In this document: positions 1,733-58,323 of the stretch, in pieces
Position numbering within the stretch: position 1 is the first letter of the stretch
How the letters are laid out: every line of letters begins with the position of its first letter
IMG/VR virus record: IMGVR_UViG_3300037042_006844
Span: 186,001-250,000 of that record
Direction: 5' to 3' (one strand)
Length of the DNA: 64,000 nucleotides
The notes under the pieces: model-generated
Databases searched by the model: none
Seen by the model: only the letters and a program-made list of their open reading frames with translations
What the model was told of the DNA's origin: nothing
Position numbers and translations under genes: made by a program

Positions 1733-2959
1733 TTATTGTTTTTTATGACAATTGGTTTTTTGAACACTAGGAACTATAAATTCCTTGCTTGCAACATTCC
1801 AATAGAAACCATTTCTATTTCGTTGCTGCAATCGTTCTTGCTTCGTTATCGGCACAAGATTGAAAGACAAATTCAAAGAAGCATTCAAATCTGCGTCAAG
1901 TTCACATTGACATTTCCCACATTTGAATCTCTTACTTTTACGGTTATCCTTCCGAGTCCAACCACATGACGAACATCTTTGACTTGTATATGTTGGATTT
2001 ATCTTGTTGACAAGGACACCTTGTGCTTCAAGTTTAGAATCCAACACATCAAAGAGTTCTCCGTAATTCCAATGCTTCATGTGGCGAGAAGTATTGGTAA
2101 ATTTTCTTAAATTTTTGATGTTTTCCCTATTTACAATTTTAACACCATCGAGATTAAGTTTATTAACAATATAACGTAAATAATTGCTTCTATGGTTAAC
2201 AACTTTATTGAAATTTTTGCTATTCTTTTTCTTTTTTGCGAGTTTATTACATATGGAAGCATAGGTATGACCATGTGGACATTTATCCAACACTTGTCCG
2301 TTGCTTGTGCTTAATGTAGTTGTCTGACCAATGTCAATGCCCATCACCATTCCTTCACTTTTATTATTAACGTCATTGACATCAAACATAAATGTAGCAT
2401 TATGTTTTGAAATTCTAATGCCTTTCTTGATCGACCCATTTTGCAACATTTTATTGAAATGTTTGTGTTTTTTGAAAGGAATATTTAATTTTATTTTATT
2501 TCCGAGACTGGTTAATAATATCCATCCATCAAAATTTGTATTTTTATCAAAATTGATTTTTACAAATCTTTCGTCCAATTCACATTCAATATTATTAATG
2601 TTTGGTTTAGATATTTTATTTTTATTATAAATTTCTTGGAGTTTTCTTGATTTTTTGAATTTACCTTCTTTTTGTAGTTTCTCGATCATGAACAATCTAC
2701 GTTTTTGTTTAAGTTGTGTTCCACGAACAATGCCACTTGCTTGTTTTCCAGCACATTGTATGATCCTAGCACTCAACCAACTATTATTCTTAATTTGTGA
2801 TGTTAATTCTTTTGGGAGAAGAGATGGGATTTTATCTAAATTCCAAATCAAATCAATAAATTGAACAACGACACTGCGATATTCTCTAATAAAACGATGG
2901 AGAATATCTAATTTGCCTTTGTTTGCAAATTTAAGCGTTGTTTTTGTTGACCGTATCAT
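1733..2959 (-). CDS. tnpB: TnpB RNA-guided endonuclease (IS607-associated)
   Basis: RuvC motifs GIDIG / NRENI / DADLNAS and zinc ribbon TSQRCSSCG...FKCGKC. Confidence 0.9.
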   Translation of the reverse strand: MIRSTKTTLKFANKGKLDILHRFIREYRSVVVQFIDLIWNLDKIPSLLPKELTSQIKNNSWLSARIIQCAGKQASGIVRGTQLKQKRRLFMIEKLQKEGKFKKSRKLQEIYNKNKISKPNINNIECELDERFVKINFDKNTNFDGWILLTSLGNKIKLNIPFKKHKHFNKMLQNGSIKKGIRISKHNATFMFDVNDVNNKSEGMVMGIDIGQTTTLSTSNGQVLDKCPHGHTYASICNKLAKKKKNSKNFNKVVNHRSNYLRYIVNKLNLDGVKIVNRENIKNLRKFTNTSRHMKHWNYGELFDVLDSKLEAQGVLVNKINPTYTSQRCSSCGWTRKDNRKSKRFKCGKCQCELDADLNASLNLSFNLVPITKQERLQQRNRNGFYWNVASKEFIVPSVQKTNCHKKQ

Positions 2960-3521
2960 TTTGCAATTCTTTTATTAGTTGTTCTGTTTTTCGTTTACTT
3001 CTTCTCTGACCATAAATTCTAGCACAAAAAGACGTTATCACATTCACGAAATCTTGAATTAAATCTTCTTTTTCTTCTTTAATATTATTAATATAAATTA
3101 CATCACAATTGAAATGTTTACATGCATATTCAATATATGTTGCACCAAATCTACTTAATCTATCTTTATGTTCAACGACCAATTTAGTTGCAGCACCATC
3201 TTTTAATAATTTGATTAGTTTGGGACGAGAATCATTTAATCCACTTCCTATTTCTTTAATATTTTCATGAGTTTTCCATCCTTTAGCGTTGCAGTAATCA
3301 ATTAATCTATTAGATTGTGATTCTAAATTGTCTTTATTTTCGGATGAACTGACTCTGGCATATGTTATTACATGTTCTTTTTTATTATTTGTCAACTCAT
3401 TTGGAACGATTATAGTTCCAGTTGGTAATTTGTATGCGCCGATGATTTGTCCACGATTGAACATCATCCATGCGGTTCTATACAAAATGCCTTTTTCTTT
3501 TGCCCAGTGACTTAATTTCAT
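2931..3521 (-). CDS. tnpA: IS607 transposase (MerR-like HTH + serine recombinase)
   Basis: YARVSS catalytic motif, EIGSGLN, VEHKDRLSRFG, SFCARIYG. Confidence 0.95.
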   Translation of the reverse strand: MKLSHWAKEKGILYRTAWMMFNRGQIIGAYKLPTGTIIVPNELTNNKKEHVITYARVSSSENKDNLESQSNRLIDYCNAKGWKTHENIKEIGSGLNDSRPKLIKLLKDGAATKLVVEHKDRLSRFGATYIEYACKHFNCDVIYINNIKEEKEDLIQDFVNVITSFCARIYGQRRSKRKTEQLIKELQNDTVNKNNA

Positions 3522-3684: not shown

Positions 3685-4551
3685 TTATTTTTTATAACTT
3701 TCACAAAATACCAATGCTCTATCCATCACATCACCACAACTCTCTCTGATCACCATCTGAGCAGCACCATCGTAAACGGTTTCTGTGTTGTTGATGATTA
3801 CGAATGTGCAATTTTTGTTGCGGCGATTTACCAATCCTGCTGCTGGCTGCACACTCAACGAACTACCAATTACAATGAGCAGATCAGCTTCATTGATGAC
3901 TCTATATGCAGTGTCGTATGTTTCGTCATTCAAACTTTCATCAAACAAAACGGTTGTGGGTCGCACTTTTCCACCACAATCACATTTGGCGATGTCGGAG
4001 GAATTCAACATATCGTCAAACTGCTCGTATGTGTATTTACGATAGCAACTAATACAATGTGCTTTTGATCCATTACCGTGTAGATCGAGCACGTTGACGC
4101 TTCCCGCTTTTTGATGTAAATTATCAATGTTTTGAGTCACCACCCATTTGATCTTGCCCATCTTTTCCAATTCAACCAAAGCCACATGCGCTTTGTTTGG
4201 TTGTTTGCGTGTTATCCCAGTCAATCTATGTTTATAGAAAGAGTAGAAAAGTTTGGGATTCTCCCTAAACATTTTTTTGCTAAGAATGTCTTGAGGGTTG
4301 TATCCTTGAAACTCTCCGCTTTGGTATATGCCATTATTTGATCGAAAATCTGGAATGCCAGACTCAGTAGATATACCAGCACCGGTGAAGGTCACAATGT
4401 TTGTTGCTTCCAACACCAATTCGTTGAACGTAACGGATTTCAACTTATCTGGCAGAGGCCCGGATGACTCAATGGGATCAGGACGTTGGTTTTTCAACCT
4501 CTCGGCTTTCAATTCATTGAGCGCATTCAAAATGGCATTCTGATCGATCAT
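3685..4551 (-). CDS. Sir2/CobB-family NAD-dependent deacylase
   Basis: TGAGISTESGIPDFRS, TQNIDNLH, LHG, CxxC..CxC zinc site, GSSL. Confidence 0.95.
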   Translation of the reverse strand: MIDQNAILNALNELKAERLKNQRPDPIESSGPLPDKLKSVTFNELVLEATNIVTFTGAGISTESGIPDFRSNNGIYQSGEFQGYNPQDILSKKMFRENPKLFYSFYKHRLTGITRKQPNKAHVALVELEKMGKIKWVVTQNIDNLHQKAGSVNVLDLHGNGSKAHCISCYRKYTYEQFDDMLNSSDIAKCDCGGKVRPTTVLFDESLNDETYDTAYRVINEADLLIVIGSSLSVQPAAGLVNRRNKNCTFVIINNTETVYDGAAQMVIRESCGDVMDRALVFCESYKK

Positions 4552-11297: not shown

Positions 11298-12053
11298 ATG
11301 ATTGTTACAGCTTGCAATATTTTCGGTAGAGCAAAAGATTTATTGCCGCATTATTTCAAACACTATTCTGGGTTGGGAATTGACAGGTTTTACTTTGGTG
11401 TGCATGGCGAAGAAAATAGTCACATATGGGAAGAGCTTCGTCATTTTGGAAACGGTTTGGATGTGCGCATATCTAAAATGCCAACCGACAAACCGTTTGA
11501 TTGTGGTCTTGATGCCGAATTCAAAACGCAGATTGGAAATTCCATTGATGGTTGGGTTGTGCCAACCGATTTAGATGAATTTCACACCATAGATGGATAT
11601 TCAGATTTTCATCAACTCGCCAAAGATTGCGAATCGGAAAATGCCGACTATGTATTTTCGCATTTTTTAGATCGCATCGCAGAAGATGGAAGTATTCCAC
11701 CGATCATCAATCCAACGATTCCAATATGGGAGCAATTTCCCAGAACGGAGCATATAACGGCGACGGTTTTGGGGGATCGAGTAAACACAAACAAATTGTG
11801 TCTGTCAAAAGCAGGAGTGCCGTTTAGAATTGGACATCATCACGTCGGTCTTGAAAATACAGAGGCGATGTATAAACAATTTTCGAAAGTCGGTGTAACA
11901 CACCATTTCAAATGGTTTGGAGAACTAAAAACGCGCGAGCTTGACAAACTAGCTGCCAATACACCCTATAAATTTTACTATACCAACGATTGGACATTGG
12001 AACATTTGAAACTTATTAATTACGTAGAATCGCACGGAGGAAAATTGATATGA
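11298..12053 (+). CDS. GT-A glycosyltransferase (GT2_4/GT92-like), tandem paralog 1
   Basis: HYSGLGID, WVVPTDLDEF, GHH, HHFKW. Confidence 0.75.
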   Translation: MIVTACNIFGRAKDLLPHYFKHYSGLGIDRFYFGVHGEENSHIWEELRHFGNGLDVRISKMPTDKPFDCGLDAEFKTQIGNSIDGWVVPTDLDEFHTIDGYSDFHQLAKDCESENADYVFSHFLDRIAEDGSIPPIINPTIPIWEQFPRTEHITATVLGDRVNTNKLCLSKAGVPFRIGHHHVGLENTEAMYKQFSKVGVTHHFKWFGELKTRELDKLAANTPYKFYYTNDWTLEHLKLINYVESHGGKLI

Positions 12054-30389: not shown

Positions 30390-30438
30390 ATTTTTGGAGG
30401 AAGGAAACCTCTTCGGCTTTAGCCTAGGGGTAGTTGAC
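30390..30438 (+). mobile_element. 49-bp collapsed IS200/IS605 scar (left end fused to right end through one hairpin)
   Basis: TTCAT|ATTTTTGGAGGAAGGAAACCTCTTCGGCTTTAGCCTAGGGGTAGTTGAC matches 5' half of LE and 3' half of RE of 51357-52681. Confidence 0.85.
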
Positions 30439-37784: not shown

Positions 37785-38803
37785 AATAAATGTGTTCGGT
37801 GATATTGTTTTGTCAATGCAAGGTGCGATTGATAAAATTTAACATCGATGTTATGCTCCGTCAATACCTCATCAATGTTGTTCATAAACACCGAATATTC
37901 TGGGTGTTTTGCACAGACTTTCTCTAAAATTATTTGGAACCACGATAGCAATCTAAGTCCTTCAGACGGATTGGTTTGCAATTGCGATATGTATGGATAC
38001 TGCGGGGATTTATCGATCATTTTGATCGTGTCTCCGAAATTGCGCATATGATAGTATTTCGCCCCATTGAACATTTCATCATCGACCCGCGTGTCGTTTG
38101 AATTATTATAACAATACAACATATTCCGCTCGTTGACCAGAACGCTGCGACGATAGTCATACATTTCTTTGACCCTCACGCTCGGCAATAACGATGCTAC
38201 ATTACGAGAAAACAACTCCATACTTTCCACTGTCGCAACATCACAATTTTTATCTGGCGCGGCACTGTATTTCGTATAAAAATCATAGCTGCATCCAAAT
38301 AATGTCGCCGCAAAACGAGTTTTTGCCCCTCGATTGGAGATTGGTCGCATGATCGGAATTCGATACATCAAATTCTTCGAATCAGTCATGTCCGCGTTTT
38401 GCCAATTCACAAACAAAACGTGGGTGGGGTGAACACGGGTTCCCGAATCCAAATTACCCACGATATCGTAATTGTTCAAATCAGAAAAAATGTCTGTGAA
38501 AACGGAACGATCATAGATTACACAATCGCTATCCATTACAACAAACTTGTCCCCAGGTGACAACGTGGCTATACCACGCTCAATATTTTCTTGATGAATG
38601 ATACTGCCACAGTCTTTCAAAATCCGAACAGTTTTTCCGTCGATCACAAACTCGCACTCATCCAAACCCATTCGAGTTGGGCAGATGAGCACTTGATCGG
38701 CATCTATTCTATGAATATTATCCATCACGTATTCAAACAACAGCCTACCCAGCAATTTGTTGGTGCGGTTATATTTGATGAATGGAATAATAACTGTGTT
38801 CAT
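37781..38803 (-). CDS. GT-A-like glycosyltransferase (paralog set A)
   Basis: HQENIE, VMDSDC, ESMELFS. Confidence 0.65.
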   Translation of the reverse strand: MNTVIIPFIKYNRTNKLLGRLLFEYVMDNIHRIDADQVLICPTRMGLDECEFVIDGKTVRILKDCGSIIHQENIERGIATLSPGDKFVVMDSDCVIYDRSVFTDIFSDLNNYDIVGNLDSGTRVHPTHVLFVNWQNADMTDSKNLMYRIPIMRPISNRGAKTRFAATLFGCSYDFYTKYSAAPDKNCDVATVESMELFSRNVASLLPSVRVKEMYDYRRSVLVNERNMLYCYNNSNDTRVDDEMFNGAKYYHMRNFGDTIKMIDKSPQYPYISQLQTNPSEGLRLLSWFQIILEKVCAKHPEYSVFMNNIDEVLTEHNIDVKFYQSHLALTKQYHRTHLL

Positions 38804-39702
38804 AACGTGGCGGCTAAAATTTTGCTTGAAGCATCTAGCCATTTATCATAAAATGCAACGTTGCAATTACGGCACAACTCGTAGAACCGAGTGTATGCCG
38901 TGTTTTGTCTTGCCAGTTTGTTGTGCAACGCCATAGTTAGATAGTCATAAGTGATACCCGTCATATGCTCCCACCATATATCGGGCATACGATTCAGCAA
39001 CAATAACTGTTTGCCGTCATCAACCACATGCTCCATGATTTGCGTGGAAACGTAATCAAAATGATCATACACCACATCTTCAATGCCGTCAATTACACAA
39101 ATTGTTTTTTTGTTGGCAATCGTCATTGGAGCACTAAGCGCAAAATCTTTGGTGCCGTCAAACGGAGGAAAAAACTTCACTGCTTTATTATATGACACCC
39201 CGCAAGATTGTCGCGTCGCAAGATTTGGCATGGCTGAAAAATTTCGATCTGTTTTTTTCAAATTCGACATTCGACATCCCCAAAAACTAGGCCATAGTCG
39301 CACATCCATGATGCGCTGCCCAGCAGTATAATTTCCAAACAGCACATATTCTTGGTTTAACATGATGTCCACAATTCGGTCCCAGTCACCTATGAAATCT
39401 GGCTCGAAACTGAAAATGTAATCCGCATTGCTATTATCTATGGCGAGGTTCATTGCTATGCTTCGCCAGTCATGAATTCCGTTACTTTCATGGCGGCAGA
39501 TCGTAATGTCACATTTACCAACAAGATCGTTCGTGATAAAATCGATGTGGCTGTTTTCACTCTGAGTCAACACATGATATCGAGCGACATCGAAAATGTA
39601 ATGGATTTTATTGAATCTGGAATGATACCGATGAATAAAATCCCGTATCATGGGACTATCAAATTCGGCAGCAGCAATTATAACAACATCTACTTTATTC
39701 AT
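38800..39702 (-). CDS. GT-A-like glycosyltransferase (paralog set A)
   Basis: DWR, FEPDF, LWPSFW, YDHFDYVS, WEHMTG. Confidence 0.65.
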   Translation of the reverse strand: MNKVDVVIIAAAEFDSPMIRDFIHRYHSRFNKIHYIFDVARYHVLTQSENSHIDFITNDLVGKCDITICRHESNGIHDWRSIAMNLAIDNSNADYIFSFEPDFIGDWDRIVDIMLNQEYVLFGNYTAGQRIMDVRLWPSFWGCRMSNLKKTDRNFSAMPNLATRQSCGVSYNKAVKFFPPFDGTKDFALSAPMTIANKKTICVIDGIEDVVYDHFDYVSTQIMEHVVDDGKQLLLLNRMPDIWWEHMTGITYDYLTMALHNKLARQNTAYTRFYELCRNCNVAFYDKWLDASSKILAATL

Positions 39703-39976
39703 AATCTTTGGAGGAAGGAAACCACGACGGCTTTAGCCTCGTGGAGGAATTCCGACCAATATAATAAGTTTTTTGACATCTTCAGTATTCTGTGATATAG
39801 TTATGTTTGAAGATTGATTTCTTCAAACATCTGCCTCACGTTAGAAATAATGTCTGGACAGCAGGCCACAGTCAATTGGCCAAACGGAAACCTCACGGTT
39901 TCCAATGAATGTAAATCTTTGAACATAAGTTTGGAGTCTTTCAAGCACCTATCCCTTTAGGGTAGGTGTGGTTGAC
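39703..39976 (+). mobile_element. Non-autonomous IS200/IS605 element (LE + promoter + omega-RNA + RE, no ORF)
   Basis: TTCAT target, LE GGAGGAAGGAAA-hairpin-GAGGAATTCCGACC, RE CAAG-hairpin-GTTGAC. Confidence 0.85.
39773..39801 (+). promoter_or_regulatory. Sigma70 promoter inside the ORF-less element
   Basis: TTGACA-N17-TGaTATAGT (extended -10). Confidence 0.75.
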
Positions 39977-39996
39977 ACCAACCGTTTACAAACCGT
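39803..39996 (+). ncRNA. Putative stand-alone TnpB omega-RNA (scaffold to 39976, guide about 39977-39996)
   Basis: Four hairpins; CAGGCCACAGTCAATTGGCCAA is covariant with CAGGTGACTGTCAACTCACCAA at the tnpB 3' end; GTCAA loop complementary to terminal TTGAC. Confidence 0.7.
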
Positions 39997-41112
39997 TCCA
40001 TAGATATCCTCATCCAATCCCTTTGTCAACGACCAAATTCCAAATTTGTCCAGCACAGCCTGCATGTCATTTTCAGCCTCAAAAATGCCAATGATCTCGT
40101 CCAATCTTCCTTCGTAGTTGCCGAAAAATTCAAACTCCTCTGGTTTTTTAAGAGCATACAACATTTGTCGCATTAGCAACAAACGGCGATACATTTCAAC
40201 TATTTCCCGATATCCGTAATCGAATTGTCGGACGTGCCGCATATACGCAACATAGCTGGAATTTTCATCCCACACGCCATCGGTTGGTTTCCACAGTCTG
40301 TTGCCCAACATGCTGGACAACGATCCAACGTGGAAATCCAGAGACGTATCCAAAATTTGTGGTATAAGCGCGTTATCTTCCAGTCTGCTATGATACAACT
40401 CATGTAGCATTTTAACACGTTTCACTTCTGGATTTTGATACAACTCCATAGAAAATCCAACCATTGTATCACCATTACAATCCTCTGTCAATACAGTCTC
40501 GGAATCTCCCAGTTTCAACGTCGTTCCCACAGGCCATGCTCTGGCACAAAAATTACGGCTTGAATTGAAAAAATGCTTTTTCTTGGTCAATAAAAGCGTG
40601 GGCCAGAAATTGAGTGTATATTCCTCTTTTCTCAGTTTGGCATTAAGATAAAAATCAGGCTTACTATAAACATATTGTCGAATGAGTTCTGCCATATATG
40701 GAGTGCAAGAGCCTCTTGGGCACCCCAAAACGTCATAGTTCTCATCAAAATACTCTTTGATTTCGATTTCAAGCAATGCGGGATTCAGCACATAGTCGTC
40801 CTCCTCCATCAACAAAATATTTTCTTTGATGTCGGGTTCAAACCTAGTTAACAAACTGTCAATATTATGACCATGCTGTCCAAGCGCATAGTTGTAATGG
40901 TTCTGCACATTTGGTAGTCGATTTAGCTGCCGCCCAATGTAATTTTTAATAAACAAAAACTCCATTGGATTAAGCTTGCCCATGCAGTCAATCGCAATAT
41001 AGGTGTTGTTGACCAGATGGCTATATTTGCTATAGTTTTGTAGCCAGAACTGCATTATCAATGGCTCACCGGTTGCAGGAAGCAATAGTGAAATTTCTCT
41101 GTTGGTGCTCAT
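39949..41112 (-). CDS. GT-A-like glycosyltransferase (paralog set A; C-terminal STTPTLKG* from IS right end)
   Basis: HGHNID, MEEDDY, FWPT, GDTMVGFS, HVGSL. Confidence 0.7.
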   Translation of the reverse strand: MSTNREISLLLPATGEPLIMQFWLQNYSKYSHLVNNTYIAIDCMGKLNPMEFLFIKNYIGRQLNRLPNVQNHYNYALGQHGHNIDSLLTRFEPDIKENILLMEEDDYVLNPALLEIEIKEYFDENYDVLGCPRGSCTPYMAELIRQYVYSKPDFYLNAKLRKEEYTLNFWPTLLLTKKKHFFNSSRNFCARAWPVGTTLKLGDSETVLTEDCNGDTMVGFSMELYQNPEVKRVKMLHELYHSRLEDNALIPQILDTSLDFHVGSLSSMLGNRLWKPTDGVWDENSSYVAYMRHVRQFDYGYREIVEMYRRLLLMRQMLYALKKPEEFEFFGNYEGRLDEIIGIFEAENDMQAVLDKFGIWSLTKGLDEDIYGTVCKRLVSTTPTLKG

Positions 41113-51356: not shown

Positions 51357-51418
51357 AATCTTGGAGGAAGGAAACCCCTTCGGCTTTAGCCAAGGGGAGG
51401 AATTCCGACCATTTAACT

Positions 51419-51447
51419 ATCTTAACACAACCACCTCAATTTGTCAA
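51419..51447 (-). promoter_or_regulatory. Outward-facing promoter in element left end
   Basis: TTGACA-N17-TGtTAAGAT pointing to gene 50397-51356. Confidence 0.65.
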
Positions 51448-51509
51448 CCACAAAAATATTTTAACTTTTTTGATGTTTTGTTATTTTCATTACTATTTAT
51501 ATCGTAGTA

Positions 51510-52670
51510 ATGATAACATACAATGTCAAATTAAAGTTTGCTAAACAAGATGATTACAATAATCTTCTTGAATCGCTCAAACTAAATCAATTGGCTTGGA
51601 ATATCATAAGTGAAGAACGATTCTCAATGACGGGTGGAAGATTGAAGCTTCTTCACGACAAGTGTTATTATAAAGTAAAAGAAGCAATTCCTACAATTCC
51701 TTCTCAATTTATCATTAAAGCAGAACAAGATGTAATTGCTACATATAAAACTATCAAGTCAAATAAACATAAACTTGATTCTCCTGCAATAAAAAAGAAT
51801 CTATCAATACAACTAGATAAACGCATATACAAGTGGATAGATAAAACTAATATCAAAATAACAACATTAGATAAACAAGCAATCGCTTCGTTTGATGTGT
51901 ATGATAAATTAAACCAATTTGACTTCAATAAGTTAAAAGATCCAAAACTATTTTTCAAAAATGGAGATTTTTACCTAAGTCTAATATTTGATACGAATGT
52001 TCCTTTTGTAGATAACAATAAAATCATAGGAATTGATGTTGGATTAAAAAGACTTGTATCAACAAGTGAAGGTATCATAATTAAAGGCAATGAATTCAAT
52101 GGACATAAACGTAAAATTCGTTGGAACAAAAGAAAACTTCAATCCAAGAAAAAATCACATTCCGCAAGAACAAAACATAAAAAACTTAAAAGGCGTGAAT
52201 CAAACTTTAGCAGAAATTATATACACAATGTTACAAAGAATGTAATTGTAAATACAAGTGCAAATACACTCGTAGTAGAAGATTTGAGCAAAATCAAAAG
52301 CAAAAATAAAGGTAGAAGATTTAATAATAGATTGAGTCAACTTCCATTTTTTGCGTTTAGATCCATATTAACATACAAGGCACAACTTTATGGGAAAAAA
52401 GTTGAAACAGTTAACCCTGCCTATACAAGCCAAATAGACCATAGAGGTTTAGCTGGTGGAAAAAGAAAGGGATGTAGATATTATGGATTGGATAAAGTAA
52501 TATTAGATTCGGATGTAAATGCCGCAATCAATATTGCAAATAGATATGTAAACAATTTAAGTTTGCATAAACACTCTGTTTCGTGCTGCAAAGCACTTGA
52601 TGGACAGGTGACTGTCAACTCACCAATCGTCGGAAGTTTCTTCCGGCAAGCCCCTATGGCTTTAGCCTAG
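51510..52670 (+). CDS. tnpB: TnpB RNA-guided endonuclease lacking canonical zinc-ribbon cysteines
   Basis: GIDVG / VVEDL / DSDVNAA RuvC triad; YKAQ, VNPAYTSQ. Confidence 0.92.
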   Translation: MITYNVKLKFAKQDDYNNLLESLKLNQLAWNIISEERFSMTGGRLKLLHDKCYYKVKEAIPTIPSQFIIKAEQDVIATYKTIKSNKHKLDSPAIKKNLSIQLDKRIYKWIDKTNIKITTLDKQAIASFDVYDKLNQFDFNKLKDPKLFFKNGDFYLSLIFDTNVPFVDNNKIIGIDVGLKRLVSTSEGIIIKGNEFNGHKRKIRWNKRKLQSKKKSHSARTKHKKLKRRESNFSRNYIHNVTKNVIVNTSANTLVVEDLSKIKSKNKGRRFNNRLSQLPFFAFRSILTYKAQLYGKKVETVNPAYTSQIDHRGLAGGKRKGCRYYGLDKVILDSDVNAAINIANRYVNNLSLHKHSVSCCKALDGQVTVNSPIVGSFFRQAPMALA

Positions 52671-52701
52671 GGGTTGTTGACAACGATTTCGCCAGAACAT
52701 T
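52560..52701 (+). ncRNA. Cis omega-RNA overlapping tnpB 3' end; guide about 52682-52701 (5' boundary approximate)
   Basis: GGTGA-CTGTCAAC-TCACC, CGGAAG-TTT-CTTCCG and RE hairpins; GTCAA/TTGAC pseudoknot. Confidence 0.7.
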
Positions 52702-53106
52702 AGTTTCCGCATTCATTCTTCCTTTGTTTTGATCGAACATCGTAAACAACTTATGAAATTGGTCGTCTTTGTTGATAACTACCCAAGTATTGGTTTGCTC
52801 ATCCATGCACATGACCACGGCATCCAGTTTGATTTTGGCAAGCTTTTTGTCCAAAATTTCAATAATAGTATCAGAAGCGACTTTCAATGGAATCGTTTCA
52901 GTCTCGGTTTTGACGTTTATCACAACCAAATTTTCGTATAGAGTTTCGAGGTCAATATTGGCGCGTTGCCATTGTTGTTCTGTATCTGAATAAAACACCA
53001 CTGTATTATCATCAATCCTCACAACATCGGTTTTATTGATATGCCGCAATGTGCTCATTGGCACGGAATACATTTTGTTGTTGTAGTATATCTCTTTCAT
53101 GCTCAT
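52654..53106 (-). CDS. Hypothetical protein (C-terminal STTPRLKP* from IS right end)
   Basis: ORF in operon with ATGA overlap to upstream gene. Confidence 0.6.
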   Translation of the reverse strand: MSMKEIYYNNKMYSVPMSTLRHINKTDVVRIDDNTVVFYSDTEQQWQRANIDLETLYENLVVINVKTETETIPLKVASDTIIEILDKKLAKIKLDAVVMCMDEQTNTWVVINKDDQFHKLFTMFDQNKGRMNAETNVLAKSLSTTPRLKP

Positions 53107-58010: not shown

Positions 58011-58074
58011 AGTTTTGGAGGAAGGAAACCTCTTCGGCTTTAGCCAAGAGGAGGAATTCCGACCACTTCTTAAT

Positions 58075-58103
58075 ATCCTATACTAGGGTCAACCGAAAGT
58101 CAA
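58075..58103 (-). promoter_or_regulatory. Outward-facing promoter in element left end
   Basis: TTGACT-N17-TAGGAT pointing to gene 57603-58010. Confidence 0.55.
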
Positions 58104-58149
58104 TACGAAAGTGAATGCTCCCAAGGTCTAAAGACCTTGGGCGTCTGTG

Positions 58150-58290
58150 TTAAGTTGCCTTAACAAAAGAGTCCATTCCGACTCTCAAAATGTTTCGTGC
58201 TGCGTTAAGGTCTCGTCCAATGTTAAGATTACAAATAGGACATTTGTGCTGTCTCTCCGACAACTCCTTCTTAACTATGGTTCCGCACCC
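58150..58290 (-). pseudogene. tnpB: C-terminal remnant of a third TnpB, followed by its own right end (hairpin 58120-58141, TTCAC ending 58111)
   Basis: Translates as GCGTIVKKELSERQHKCPICNLNIGRDLNAARNILRVGMDSFVKAT*. Confidence 0.85.
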
Positions 58291-58323
58291 CTACGTCTTT
58301 AGCGTAGGTGTGGTTGACATATG

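What the first reader, a model, noticed from the sequence alone, without database searches (positions are those of the whole stretch)
39703..39996. Protein-free, self-promoted omega-RNA gene: a candidate trans-acting guide for the TnpB 12 kb away
Seen: a 274-bp element with no ORF but a near-consensus promoter (TTGACA-N17-TGaTATAGT, 39773-39801), a perfect 11-bp hairpin (ATGTTTGAAGA/TCTTCAAACAT, 39803-39830), a GGCCA-CAGTCAAT-TGGCC hairpin covarying with GGTGA-CTGTCAAC-TCACC in the tnpB 3' end, a GGAAACC/GGTTTCC hairpin and the terminal hairpin; the GTCAA loop can pair with the terminal TTGAC. Established: TnpB omega-RNAs derive from the right end, use the 3' flank as guide and form this pseudoknot. 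Inference: structure is conserved while sequence has diverged, so this looks like a maintained guide cassette (guide about ACCAACCGTTTACAAACCGT) rather than debris. One TnpB could then carry several guides, a dispersed mini-array that cuts element-free alleles in co-infecting relatives and drives this glycosyltransferase haplotype.
Basis: partly seen in the sequence, partly recalled or inferred. Interest (0 to 1): 0.85.

Follow-up and report, generated by a model that had tools for sequence, protein, structure and literature searches.

The report
Protein-less IS605 mini-transposon with guide RNA
The 274-bp stretch is a miniature, gene-less copy of an IS200/IS605-type jumping element in a jumbo phage that still carries a complete TnpB guide-RNA module, which is a kind of element already described in bacteria and therefore a good but not new example.

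Summary

It is more than an omega-RNA gene. It is a complete non-autonomous IS200/IS605-family element (PATE-like).
- Its left end is about 90% identical to the left end of the tnpB element at 51357-52681, and it has a matching right end.
- It sits directly after TTCAT.
- Orthologous loci in three other assemblies lack it, and two of them show the ATGA stop/start overlap that removing it predicts.
- An autonomous relative (L024) has the same ends plus a Y1 TnpA.
- The window holds four family copies: 50 nt, 274 nt, 308 nt and 1325 nt.

A covariance model built only from full-length elements hits 39817-39976 over its whole length (70 bits, E about 7e-15). The model's structure is strongly covariation-supported.

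- The scaffold resembles TnpB clades encoded elsewhere in the phage more than the copy 12 kb away.
- The other protein-less copies have lost the scaffold.
- Across contigs there is a continuum of 5' deletions.

Standalone omega-RNAs acting in trans, and PATEs that encode omega-RNAs, are already published. Verdict: a new member of a known kind. The trans-guide function is plausible but untested, and the "mini-array driving a haplotype" idea is unsupported.

The parts
39698..39702 (+). TTCAT target/TAM. It is the reverse complement of ATGAA, the start codon plus two bases of minus-strand gene 38800-39702.
   Evidence: TTCAT precedes every one of the 21 distinct family elements. All 4 window copies sit at a TTCAT that is a gene start; only 11 of the 147 plus-strand TTCAT sites are gene starts.
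39703..39976 (+). The whole non-autonomous IS200/IS605-family mini-element (PATE-like), 274 bp.
   Evidence: Both ends are shared with the tnpB element at 51357-52681. The element is absent from orthologous loci L049, L050 and L051. Removing it restores the upstream protein's ...CKRLV C-terminus seen in L049 and the ATGA stop/start overlap seen in L050 and L051.
39703..39758 (+). Left end (LE), with its subterminal hairpin at 39722-39744 (CCACGA...TCGTGG around a GGCTTTAGCC core).
   Evidence: About 90% identical to the LE at 51357, with compensatory stem changes (CCCCTT/AAGGGG versus CCACGA/TCGTGG). The same LE stem occurs in the full element L025 and the mini L030.
39773..39801 (+). Inward sigma-70-like promoter, TTGACA-17-TGaTATAGT.
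   Evidence: Scores 11/12 plus TG, and such sites are rare in the window. A homologous weaker site occurs in mini L030. It occupies the place where full elements carry a conserved outward promoter. Function is untested.
39803..39830 (+). Perfect 11-bp hairpin at the deletion junction. Its 3' arm contains the family-conserved CAAAC motif that opens the omega-RNA scaffold.
   Evidence: Fold and covariance-model alignment. Its role is unknown.
39817..39976 (+). Omega-RNA scaffold: P1 39831-39861, P2 with the GTCAA loop 39864-39881, an extra inserted hairpin 39886-39903, P3 39917-39936, the RE hairpin 39945-39969, and the terminal TTGAC 39972-39976.
   Evidence: Model R1, built only from 11 full-length elements, gives 70 bits, E = 7e-15, covering model positions 1-136. 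The scaffold keeps 38 of the 41 positions that are invariant in 12 full elements. No conserved structure lies further upstream in full elements.
39977..39996 (+). Right flank, the predicted guide segment ACCAACCGTTTACAAACCGT. It is antisense to the last codons of gene 39977-41112.
   Evidence: The boundary is fixed by the empty-site comparison. The sequence is unique in the window at up to 3 mismatches.
39949..39976 (-). Eight extra codons (STTPTLKG) and a TAG stop added to the upstream ORF by the right end.
   Evidence: The same kind of tail is seen at the 30390 and 51357 copies.
51357..52681 (+). Full-length TnpB-only family member. It contains tnpB 51510-52670, omega-RNA 52561-52681, and an outward promoter on the minus strand at 51447-51419.
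   Evidence: Pfam OrfB_IS605 plus Cas12f1-like_TNB. The RuvC D/E/D residues are present and the protein matches ISDra2 TnpB structures. Model score 119.8 bits. Promoter.
30390..30438 (+). Ultra-mini element of about 50 nt: the left half of the LE fused to the right half of the RE through the shared hairpin loop. No omega-RNA.
   Evidence: Similar 50-nt elements lie at other sites in L001, L007, L012 and L021.
58011..58318 (+). Second protein-less mini-element (308 bp), with family LE and RE but no recognisable omega-RNA scaffold.
   Evidence: It is not hit by R1 apart from the LE hairpin. It is nonetheless structured, z = -4.2.

Best explanation
Window 39703-39976 is a PATE-like, non-autonomous member of an IS200/IS605-family lineage that populates jumbo-phage genomes.

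**How it arose.** An internal deletion removed the whole tnpB reading frame. What remains is the left end, a promoter region, the complete roughly 135-nt omega-RNA scaffold and the right end. The element inserted strand-specifically just 3' of TTCAT, with no target duplication, at an ATGA stop/start junction between two glycosyltransferase-cluster genes.

**Shown.** Its identity as a transposon, its boundaries, its target site and the structural integrity of the scaffold.

**Inferred mechanism.**
1. The inward TTGACA-17-TATAGT promoter transcribes the scaffold and about 16-20 nt of right flank.
2. A compatible TnpB encoded elsewhere in the same phage binds this RNA in trans. Clade B/C copies at contig positions of about 267-271 kb are more likely partners than the clade A copy at 51510-52670.
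3. The complex cuts TTCAT followed by ACCAACCGTTT... in genomes that lack the element. Such genomes arise after TnpA-mediated excision, or enter the cell with a co-infecting element-free phage.
4. Recombinational repair from an element-bearing copy restores or spreads the element.

This is the standard IS605 'peel-and-paste plus cut-and-copy' retention mechanism applied to a protein-less passenger.

**Probabilities.** About 0.9 that it is such a mini-transposon. About 0.4-0.5 that its omega-RNA is still expressed and used.
For: **Shared ends**
- The LE and RE are shared with the full element.
- TTCAT precedes all 21 distinct copies.
- The autonomous relative L024 has the same ends plus a Y1 TnpA (PF01797, 9e-36) and a TnpB.

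**Empty sites**
- L050 and L051 have the predicted ATGA overlap. L049 has neither the element nor TTCAT.

**Omega-RNA structure of the family**
- 94.9% of cells are paired, against 32-41% when partners are slid. 22 of 32 pairs change on both sides.

**Scaffold in this element**
- The full-length model match scores 70 bits.
- 38 of 41 family-invariant positions are kept, while identity to any sampled full element at variable columns is only 36-64%.
- All covarying structure in full elements lies within the retained 136 nt.
- The fold has z = -5.9.

**Promoter**
- 11/12 plus TG.
- Sigma-70-type promoters appear to be used by the family: a conserved outward TTGACA-17-TAnnnT occurs in 12 of 12 full elements.

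**Partner enzyme and self-targeting**
- TnpB has RuvC D/E/D.
- The guide is unique in the window, and the resident copy is flanked by TTGAC rather than the TAM, so it is not self-targeted.

**Literature**
- PATEs encode omega-RNAs that TnpB would act on in trans (PMC10055086).
- Standalone omega-RNAs function in trans (PMC10691335).
Against: - There are no expression, binding or cleavage data.
- Model scores of protein-less copies (46-70 bits) are well below those of full elements (108-148). Truncated copies form a continuum of 5' deletions, as expected for decay.
- P1 is register-shifted with a bulge, and a 21-nt hairpin is inserted after P2. Either change could impair TnpB binding.
- The sibling copies at 30390 and 58011 persist without a scaffold, so the scaffold is not needed for persistence.
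- No Y1 TnpA was found in the window or in this phage contig by a close-relative search.
- The compensatory changes may have arisen in an unsampled full-length parent rather than in the mini lineage.
- The host is unknown and only 5 of 64 genes have Shine-Dalgarno sites, so use of sigma-70 promoters is inferred, not shown.
Confidence: 0.6

Rival explanations
1. Inert relic. The element is a decaying internal-deletion derivative. Its omega-RNA scaffold is intact only because it adjoins the right end that any surviving copy must keep, or because it was inherited from a recent unsampled full-length parent. It is neither transcribed nor used by TnpB.
For: - Truncated and protein-less copies form a continuum, with falling model scores.
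- Neighbouring copies at 30390 and 58011 have lost the scaffold.
- The scaffold has a shifted P1 and a 21-nt insertion.
- No cognate TnpA was detected in this phage.
Against: - It keeps 38 of 41 invariant positions despite 36-64% identity at variable columns.
- Every stem remains able to pair.
- The deletion stops exactly at the 5' edge of the covarying structure.
- A near-consensus inward promoter sits 16 nt upstream, while the family's usual outward promoter has been lost at the same spot.
Confidence: 0.3
2. Domesticated guide cassette. The phage keeps dispersed protein-less guides as a mini-array, so that one TnpB cuts competing element-free phages and drives linked glycosyltransferase alleles. 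On this view the phage benefits, not only the transposon.
For: - The same phage genome carries several tnpB copies and several elements.
- Homing-type marker exclusion is known for phage free-standing homing endonucleases (PMC13565253).
- The elements cluster in a glycosyltransferase region.
Against: - Only one of the three protein-less window copies has a scaffold.
- The guide is dictated by the insertion site, not selected.
- Sampled relatives either lack the TAM (L049) or match the guide at only about half of its positions (L050, by eye), so no natural target is in hand.
- The element keeps both transposon ends, as a mobile parasite would.
Confidence: 0.06
3. Cis-regulatory insertion. The element matters mainly through its effect on the neighbouring genes, not as a guide RNA. 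It uncouples two translationally coupled genes, adds an 8-residue tail, and its inward promoter makes an antisense RNA against the 3' end of 39977-41112.
For: - The insertion lies exactly in an ATGA junction and adds a tail.
- The plus-strand promoter faces against the minus-strand operon.
- Full elements carry a conserved outward promoter aimed at the flanking gene, so the family does interact with host-gene expression.
Against: - This copy has lost the outward promoter.
- Nothing indicates selection for such effects.
- The effects follow passively from any insertion at this target site.
Confidence: 0.04

Closest known systems
PATEs and standalone omega-RNAs of IS200/IS605 (OMEGA) systems. 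Sources: Geobacillus stearothermophilus PATEs in Meers et al. 2023, PMC10055086; standalone omega-RNAs summarised in Altae-Tran et al. 2023, PMC10691335.
   Same: - A protein-less element bounded by IS605-type LE and RE hairpins.
- It carries an omega-RNA whose guide is the right flank.
- It depends on TnpA and TnpB supplied in trans by other copies in the same genome.
   Different: - It resides in a jumbo-phage genome, in a lineage seen here only in viral contigs.
- It has its own near-consensus inward promoter where relatives have an outward one.
- The scaffold carries an extra hairpin and a shifted P1.
- No cognate TnpA was found in this genome.
ISDra2-type TnpB and its omega-RNA (PDB 8bf8, 8exa, 8h1j).
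   Same: - RuvC D/E/D nuclease with the OrfB_IS605 and TNB domains.
- The omega-RNA overlaps the tnpB 3' end and the RE.
- A five-base TAM equals the transposon target site.
- A predicted pseudoknot lies between an internal loop and the bases just before the guide.
   Different: - Only distant sequence similarity (E about 7e-7 over the RuvC core).
- The TAM is TTCAT, not TTGAT.
- No C4 zinc-finger cysteines.
- The omega-RNA family is not in Rfam.
Free-standing homing endonuclease genes of T4-like phages (Seg, Mob).
   Same: - They insert between conserved phage genes.
- They spread by cleavage of element-free genomes during co-infection followed by recombinational repair (PMC13565253).
   Different: - Here recognition would be RNA-guided.
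- This particular copy does not encode the nuclease.
- Homing in phage co-infection is inferred here, not shown.
MITEs and other miniature derivatives of insertion sequences.
   Same: An internal-deletion derivative that keeps only the ends, occurs in multiple copies, and comes in graded sizes (50, 274 and 308 nt in this window).
   Different: - It has no terminal inverted repeats and makes no target-site duplication.
- Its ends are asymmetric hairpins typical of the single-strand transposition of IS200/IS605.

Membership tests
IS200/IS605-family transposable element (non-autonomous, PATE-like) | Asymmetric left and right ends with subterminal hairpins, and no terminal inverted repeats. | tested here: met
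   LE hairpin at 39722-39744 and RE hairpin at 39945-39969. Both are shared with the copy at 51357-52681 and with more than 20 elements in other contigs, and their stems covary.
IS200/IS605-family transposable element (non-autonomous, PATE-like) | Oriented insertion 3' of a short conserved target, without target-site duplication. | tested here: met
   TTCAT lies immediately 5' of all 21 distinct copies. Removing 39703-39976 recreates an uninterrupted junction like the one in L050 and L051, with no duplicated bases beyond a 1-nt A/A ambiguity.
IS200/IS605-family transposable element (non-autonomous, PATE-like) | The same ends are associated with a Y1 (HUH) TnpA transposase in autonomous copies. 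| tested here: met
   The L024 element (1722 bp) has the same LE and RE, plus L024:170-577(-) matching Y1_Tnp PF01797 at 9e-36, plus TnpB. Relatives are L035-L038.
IS200/IS605-family transposable element (non-autonomous, PATE-like) | No protein-coding gene between the ends. | tested here: met
   The ORFs inside the element are short (33-48 aa); a 107-aa listed ORF only overlaps its first 93 nt. tblastn finds no TnpB remnant.
IS200/IS605-family transposable element (non-autonomous, PATE-like) | Presence/absence polymorphism (mobility). | tested here: met
   The element is absent from orthologous loci L049 (83% protein identity), L050 (60%) and L051 (54%). Polymorphism within one population was not tested.
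IS200/IS605-family transposable element (non-autonomous, PATE-like) | A cognate TnpA is available in the same genome. | tested here: not met
   No Y1_Tnp among 20 small window ORFs. The close-relative scan found none in contig 3300037042_006844. Only about a quarter of the contig was read directly, so absence is not proven.
TnpB omega-RNA | Lies at the 3' end of the element, on the tnpB strand, overlaps the RE, and has the flank as guide. | tested here: met
   The scaffold at 39817-39976 abuts the flank at 39977 onward, in the same orientation as tnpB in full elements.
TnpB omega-RNA | A family-specific secondary structure supported by covariation, and present in this copy. | tested here: met
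   For the family: 94.9% of cells paired and 22 of 32 pairs with double changes. For this copy: 70 bits over the whole model and all stems formed in its own fold. In the fixed alignment it pairs at 27 of 32 positions because P1 is register-shifted.
TnpB omega-RNA | A pseudoknot between an internal loop and the nucleotides preceding the guide. | tested here: inconclusive
   GTCAAY and GTTGAC are complementary in 17 of 17 sequences. Five of the six pairs never vary, and the sixth shows CG 9, UG 7, UA 1. The terminal TTGAC is probably also the TnpA cleavage motif, which would explain its conservation without a pseudoknot.
TnpB omega-RNA | Transcribed, bound by TnpB, and directs TAM-dependent DNA cleavage. 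| not testable with these tools
   Only a promoter-like site is available as evidence.
TnpB RNA-guided nuclease (protein 51510-52670, the proposed partner) | OrfB_IS605/TNB domains with the RuvC catalytic D, E, D. | tested here: met
   Pfam hits at 1e-12 and 2.5e-12. The motifs GIDVG, VVEDL and DSDVNAAINI are present. It matches ISDra2 TnpB structures.
TnpB RNA-guided nuclease (protein 51510-52670, the proposed partner) | C4 zinc finger between RuvC-II and RuvC-III. | tested here: not met
   That segment holds a single cysteine, and none in the clade B copy L025 (read from the DNA shown). Loss of the zinc finger is known in some TnpB branches (PMC10691335).
TnpB RNA-guided nuclease (protein 51510-52670, the proposed partner) | Its own omega-RNA matches the mini-element's scaffold (cognate pair). 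| tested here: inconclusive
   The scaffold's pairwise similarity to this copy's omega-RNA ranks 13th of 16, below all clade B/C copies, and identity at variable columns is 0.36 against 0.59-0.64 for the closest copies, E12, E18, E19 and the L019 fragment. TnpB clades share only 36-57% identity. Cross-recognition cannot be computed.

The most novel reading that the evidence does not exclude
A phage-restricted IS605 lineage uses protein-less, self-promoted omega-RNA elements as extra guides for RNA-guided homing or exclusion between co-infecting jumbo phages. In this copy the family's outward promoter has been converted into an inward one specifically to express the guide. The element would then be maintained by selection as a trans-acting guide rather than surviving as debris.
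Probability: 0.15. Interest if true: 0.7.

Novelty: new member of a known kind. Interest (0 to 1): 0.4.

Why it matters
If the RNA is made and used, this would be a clean natural case of a protein-less guide cassette serving a TnpB in trans inside a virus. It would extend the transposon 'cut-and-copy' retention model to phage co-infection, where free-standing homing endonucleases are already known to bias inheritance.

The family also offers a compact experimental set:
- one TAM (TTCAT);
- three TnpB clades in one genome;
- a graded series of elements from 1722 bp, which includes TnpA, down to 50 nt.

Such a set could define which omega-RNA parts and which end sequences are needed for guidance and for mobility. 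As it stands, the finding is a well-documented example of something already described in bacteria.

Tried and rejected
- **Rfam.** No family reaches its gathering score anywhere in the window. Permissive scans of 39600-40100 and 52300-52800 give only sub-threshold noise.
- **GenBank phage collection.** blastn of 39650-40050 finds nothing.
- **First LE pattern scan.** It had a spacer one base too long and found only L001. The corrected scan is.
- **Giant-virus origin.** One related contig is labelled GVMAG, so I considered this. I rejected it for this window because the PolB looks most like Uroviricota clusters and an endolysin-like gene is present.
- **Genome-contig scan with the LE pattern.** It gave one hit (L052) that has no LE hairpin and no TTCAT, so it is probably chance.
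- **Metagenome-contig scan with this copy's exact LE hairpin.** It returned only L025-like full elements and no further minis.
- **Y1 TnpA in the window.** I looked among 20 small ORFs and found none.
- **L019 as a partner.** I tested whether L019, which has one of the most similar scaffolds in the same contig, has an intact tnpB. Only the last 110 or so codons remain.
- **Extra conserved RNA structure upstream of the 136-nt scaffold in full elements.** None was found.
- **mini_58k as a second guide cassette.** It does not match the model.

Full report
**What is there**

Window 39703-39976 lies between two minus-strand ORFs, 38800-39702 and 39949-41112, and holds no credible ORF of its own.
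- TTGACA-17-TATAGT with an upstream TG lies at 39773-39801 and scores 11/12. Only six sites this good occur in the window on both strands, against about 2.5 in randomised sequence.
- As RNA, 39803-39976 folds into six hairpins at -61.7 kcal/mol with z = -5.9. They are the perfect 11-bp hairpin, P1, the GGCCA/TGGCC hairpin with a CAGTCAAT loop, the GGAAACC/GGTTTCC hairpin, P3 and the terminal hairpin.

**It is a whole mini-transposon, not only an RNA gene**

- The first 56 nt are about 90% identical to the sequence that begins right after TTCAT at 51357, upstream of tnpB. The differences in the hairpin stem are compensatory.
- The last 35 or so nt match the sequence that ends at 52681, just after tnpB.
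- Pattern and repeat searches find four such elements in the window, all on the plus strand and all directly after TTCAT: 30390-30438 (about 50 nt), 39703-39976 (274 nt), 51357-52681 (1325 nt, with tnpB) and 58011-58318 (308 nt).
- In each case TTCAT is the reverse complement of the ATGAA start of a minus-strand gene. Only 11 of the 147 plus-strand TTCAT sites in the window are gene starts. This fits survival only of insertions that do not break a reading frame.

**The family**

The window is positions 186001-250000 of a 303.6-kb viral contig. Its PolB looks most like tailed-phage clusters.

Scans of viral contigs with the LE and RE motifs returned about 80 loci. They include:
- full elements of 1309-1338 bp;
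- a 1722-bp element (L024) that adds a divergent Y1 HUH transposase (PF01797, 9e-36);
- several protein-less minis;
- 50-nt LE/RE hybrid hairpins at five different sites.

This places the family in IS200/IS605. The LE motif gave no convincing hit in 185,579 prokaryotic species genomes.

No Y1 transposase was found in the window or in this contig by a close-relative search. A separate IS607-type pair, a serine recombinase plus a TnpB, lies at 1733-3521.

**Proof of insertion and of the boundaries**

Orthologues of the 38800-39702 protein occur in three other assemblies.
- In L050 and L051 the upstream gene overlaps the orthologue by ATGA, with nothing in between.
- In L049 (83% identity) the junction has a two-base spacer between the upstream stop and the start codon, and no TTCAT.

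Deleting 39703-39976 from the window recreates ...CKRLV-stop inside gtATGAat, which is that same arrangement. The element therefore starts right after TTCAT and ends with GTTGAC.

With the element in place, the upstream ORF reads eight codons into the right end and stops at a TAG in the hairpin. The copies at 30390 and 51357 do the same.

**The omega-RNA**

I aligned the last 136 or so nt of 11 full-length elements. RNAalifold gave P1 with an inner hairpin, P2 and the RE hairpin, and 16 of the 29 pairs show compensatory changes.

A covariance model built from these sequences alone (R1) gave these results:
- 39817-39976 scores 70 bits, E = 7e-15, over model positions 1-136.
- The tnpB copy's own 3' end scores 120 bits.
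- The element at 58011 and the 50-nt element are not hit.

On a 17-sequence alignment, with the pseudoknot added to the structure:
- 94.9% of cells are paired, against 32-41% when partners are slid;
- 22 of 32 pairs change on both sides;
- no shuffle reaches the observed values.

The pseudoknot (loop GTCAAY with terminal GTTGAC) pairs in every sequence, but only one of its pairs varies (CG 9, UG 7, UA 1). It is consistent with the data but not proven, and the terminal TTGAC is probably also the transposase cleavage motif.

Extending the alignment to 270 nt shows no further covarying structure upstream. The mini-element therefore retains the entire conserved scaffold and nothing recognisable of tnpB.

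It keeps 38 of the 41 positions that are invariant in 12 full elements, while being only 36-64% identical to any of them at variable columns.

Relative to the family it has a register-shifted P1 with a bulged A and a 21-nt hairpin inserted after P2.

**Which TnpB?**

TnpB 51510-52670 has the RuvC D, E and D residues and distantly matches ISDra2 TnpB structures. It lacks the C4 zinc-finger cysteines.

The family's TnpBs fall into three clades that share 36-57% identity. The window copy is clade A.

The mini-element's scaffold is closest to those of E12, E18 and E19 (clades B and C) and to the L019 fragment. At variable columns, identity to those copies is 0.59-0.64, against 0.36 for the window's own copy.

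The same phage contig encodes a clade B copy (L031, at about 267 kb), a clade C copy (L033, at about 270.5 kb), and a truncated copy with a very similar scaffold (L019, at about 145 kb, with only the last 110 or so codons left).

**Maintained or decaying?**

The evidence points both ways.

For maintenance:
- an intact scaffold with compensated stems;
- invariant positions retained;
- a deletion that stops exactly at the 5' edge of the structure;
- a near-consensus inward promoter.

That promoter is notable. Every one of the 12 full elements has a conserved outward promoter on the other strand: TTGACA, a 17-nt spacer (18 in one), then TAnnnT, ending 62-65 nt from the LE tip (51447-51419 in the window). 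This copy has lost the outward promoter and has the inward one at the same place. A related mini (L030) has a weaker inward version.

For decay:
- Protein-less copies score 46-70 bits, against 108-148 for full elements.
- Copies with only C-terminal tnpB remnants bridge the two groups.
- The two other protein-less copies in the window have no scaffold.
- The compensatory changes could have arisen in an unsampled full-length parent.

I put the chance that the RNA is still made and used at roughly 0.4-0.5.

**Comparison with what is known**

- Meers et al. describe protein-less PATEs with IS605 ends in Geobacillus. [quoted passage not shown]
- Altae-Tran et al. summarise that standalone, mobilised omega-RNAs occur alongside effector loci and function in trans (PMC10691335).

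This element is a new member of it, in a jumbo phage.

The 'dispersed mini-array' and 'haplotype drive' extensions have no support from the sequence. The guide is dictated by the insertion site, only one of the three protein-less copies could supply a guide, and no natural target was found among the sampled relatives.

**Verdict**

- Novelty: a new member of a known kind.
- Interest is moderate, mainly as a tidy experimental system and for the phage setting.

Noticed in passing
window 51447-51419 (minus strand); the same position in L003, L007, L008, L016, L024, L025, L026, L028, L031, L032: All 12 full-length family elements carry an outward-facing sigma-70-like promoter in the left end: TTGACA, a 17-nt spacer (18 in one), then TAnnnT, with the -10 ending 62-65 nt from the LE tip. 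It points at the flanking gene whose ATG abuts the element, so it may compensate for the polar effect of the insertion. The copy at 39703 has lost it.
   Followed up: partly
window 30390-30438; also L001:9303-9353, L007:611-660, L012:3346-3395, L021:8120-8169: These are elements of about 50 nt, made of the 5' half of the LE fused to the 3' half of the RE through the shared GGCTTTAGCC hairpin core. Each follows TTCAT at a different site in a different contig. They are either minimal mobile units or recurrent LE x RE recombination scars.
   Followed up: partly
window 58011-58318: This is a second protein-less mini-element, lying 5 nt downstream of the PolB stop codon. It has family LE and RE, a weak outward promoter and strong predicted structure (z = -4.2), but it does not match the omega-RNA model. 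It keeps a TGTTTCGTGCTGC fragment resembling the 5' half of P1 in the tnpB copy.
   Followed up: partly
window 1733-3521 (minus strand): A separate IS607-type unit lies here: a serine recombinase (2931-3521, Pfam Resolvase) overlapping a 408-aa TnpB (1733-2959, Cas12f1-like_TNB). It sits next to a Sir2-family gene (3685-4551) and a thymidylate synthase (597-1730).
   Followed up: no
window-wide, for example upstream of the starts at 11298, 12829, 13212, 17410, 27522(-) and 51510: Only 5 of 64 long ORFs have a Shine-Dalgarno-like motif. Twelve of the 64 have TATTTAT within 35 nt upstream of the ATG, out of 38 such sites in 128 kb of both strands. This is probably a phage-specific promoter motif, and it also precedes tnpB.
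   Followed up: partly
window 39949-39976, 52654-52681 and 30419-30438 (minus strand): The right end supplies an in-frame TAG to the upstream gene at three insertions. The added tails are STTPTLKG, STTPRLKP and SQLPLG.
   Followed up: yes
window 51510-52670 and the homologues in L025, L031 and others: This TnpB lineage lacks the C4 zinc-finger cysteines between RuvC-II and RuvC-III but keeps the catalytic D, E and D. Three clades sharing 36-57% identity coexist, at least two of them within one phage genome.
   Followed up: partly
L019:2239-2266 (minus strand; the same contig as the window, at about 143 kb): A family left end is followed after about 95 nt by unrelated GC-rich sequence rather than by tnpB. 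The family copies in this part of the contig lie on the opposite strand to those at 216-271 kb.
   Followed up: no
L084:9404-9507 and L056:5759-5860: A GC-rich sub-lineage of minis of about 150 nt has a divergent LE, a GGCAG/CTGCC P2 stem with the GTCAAC loop, and a family RE. It is another protein-less copy that keeps the P2-to-RE part of the scaffold.
   Followed up: no
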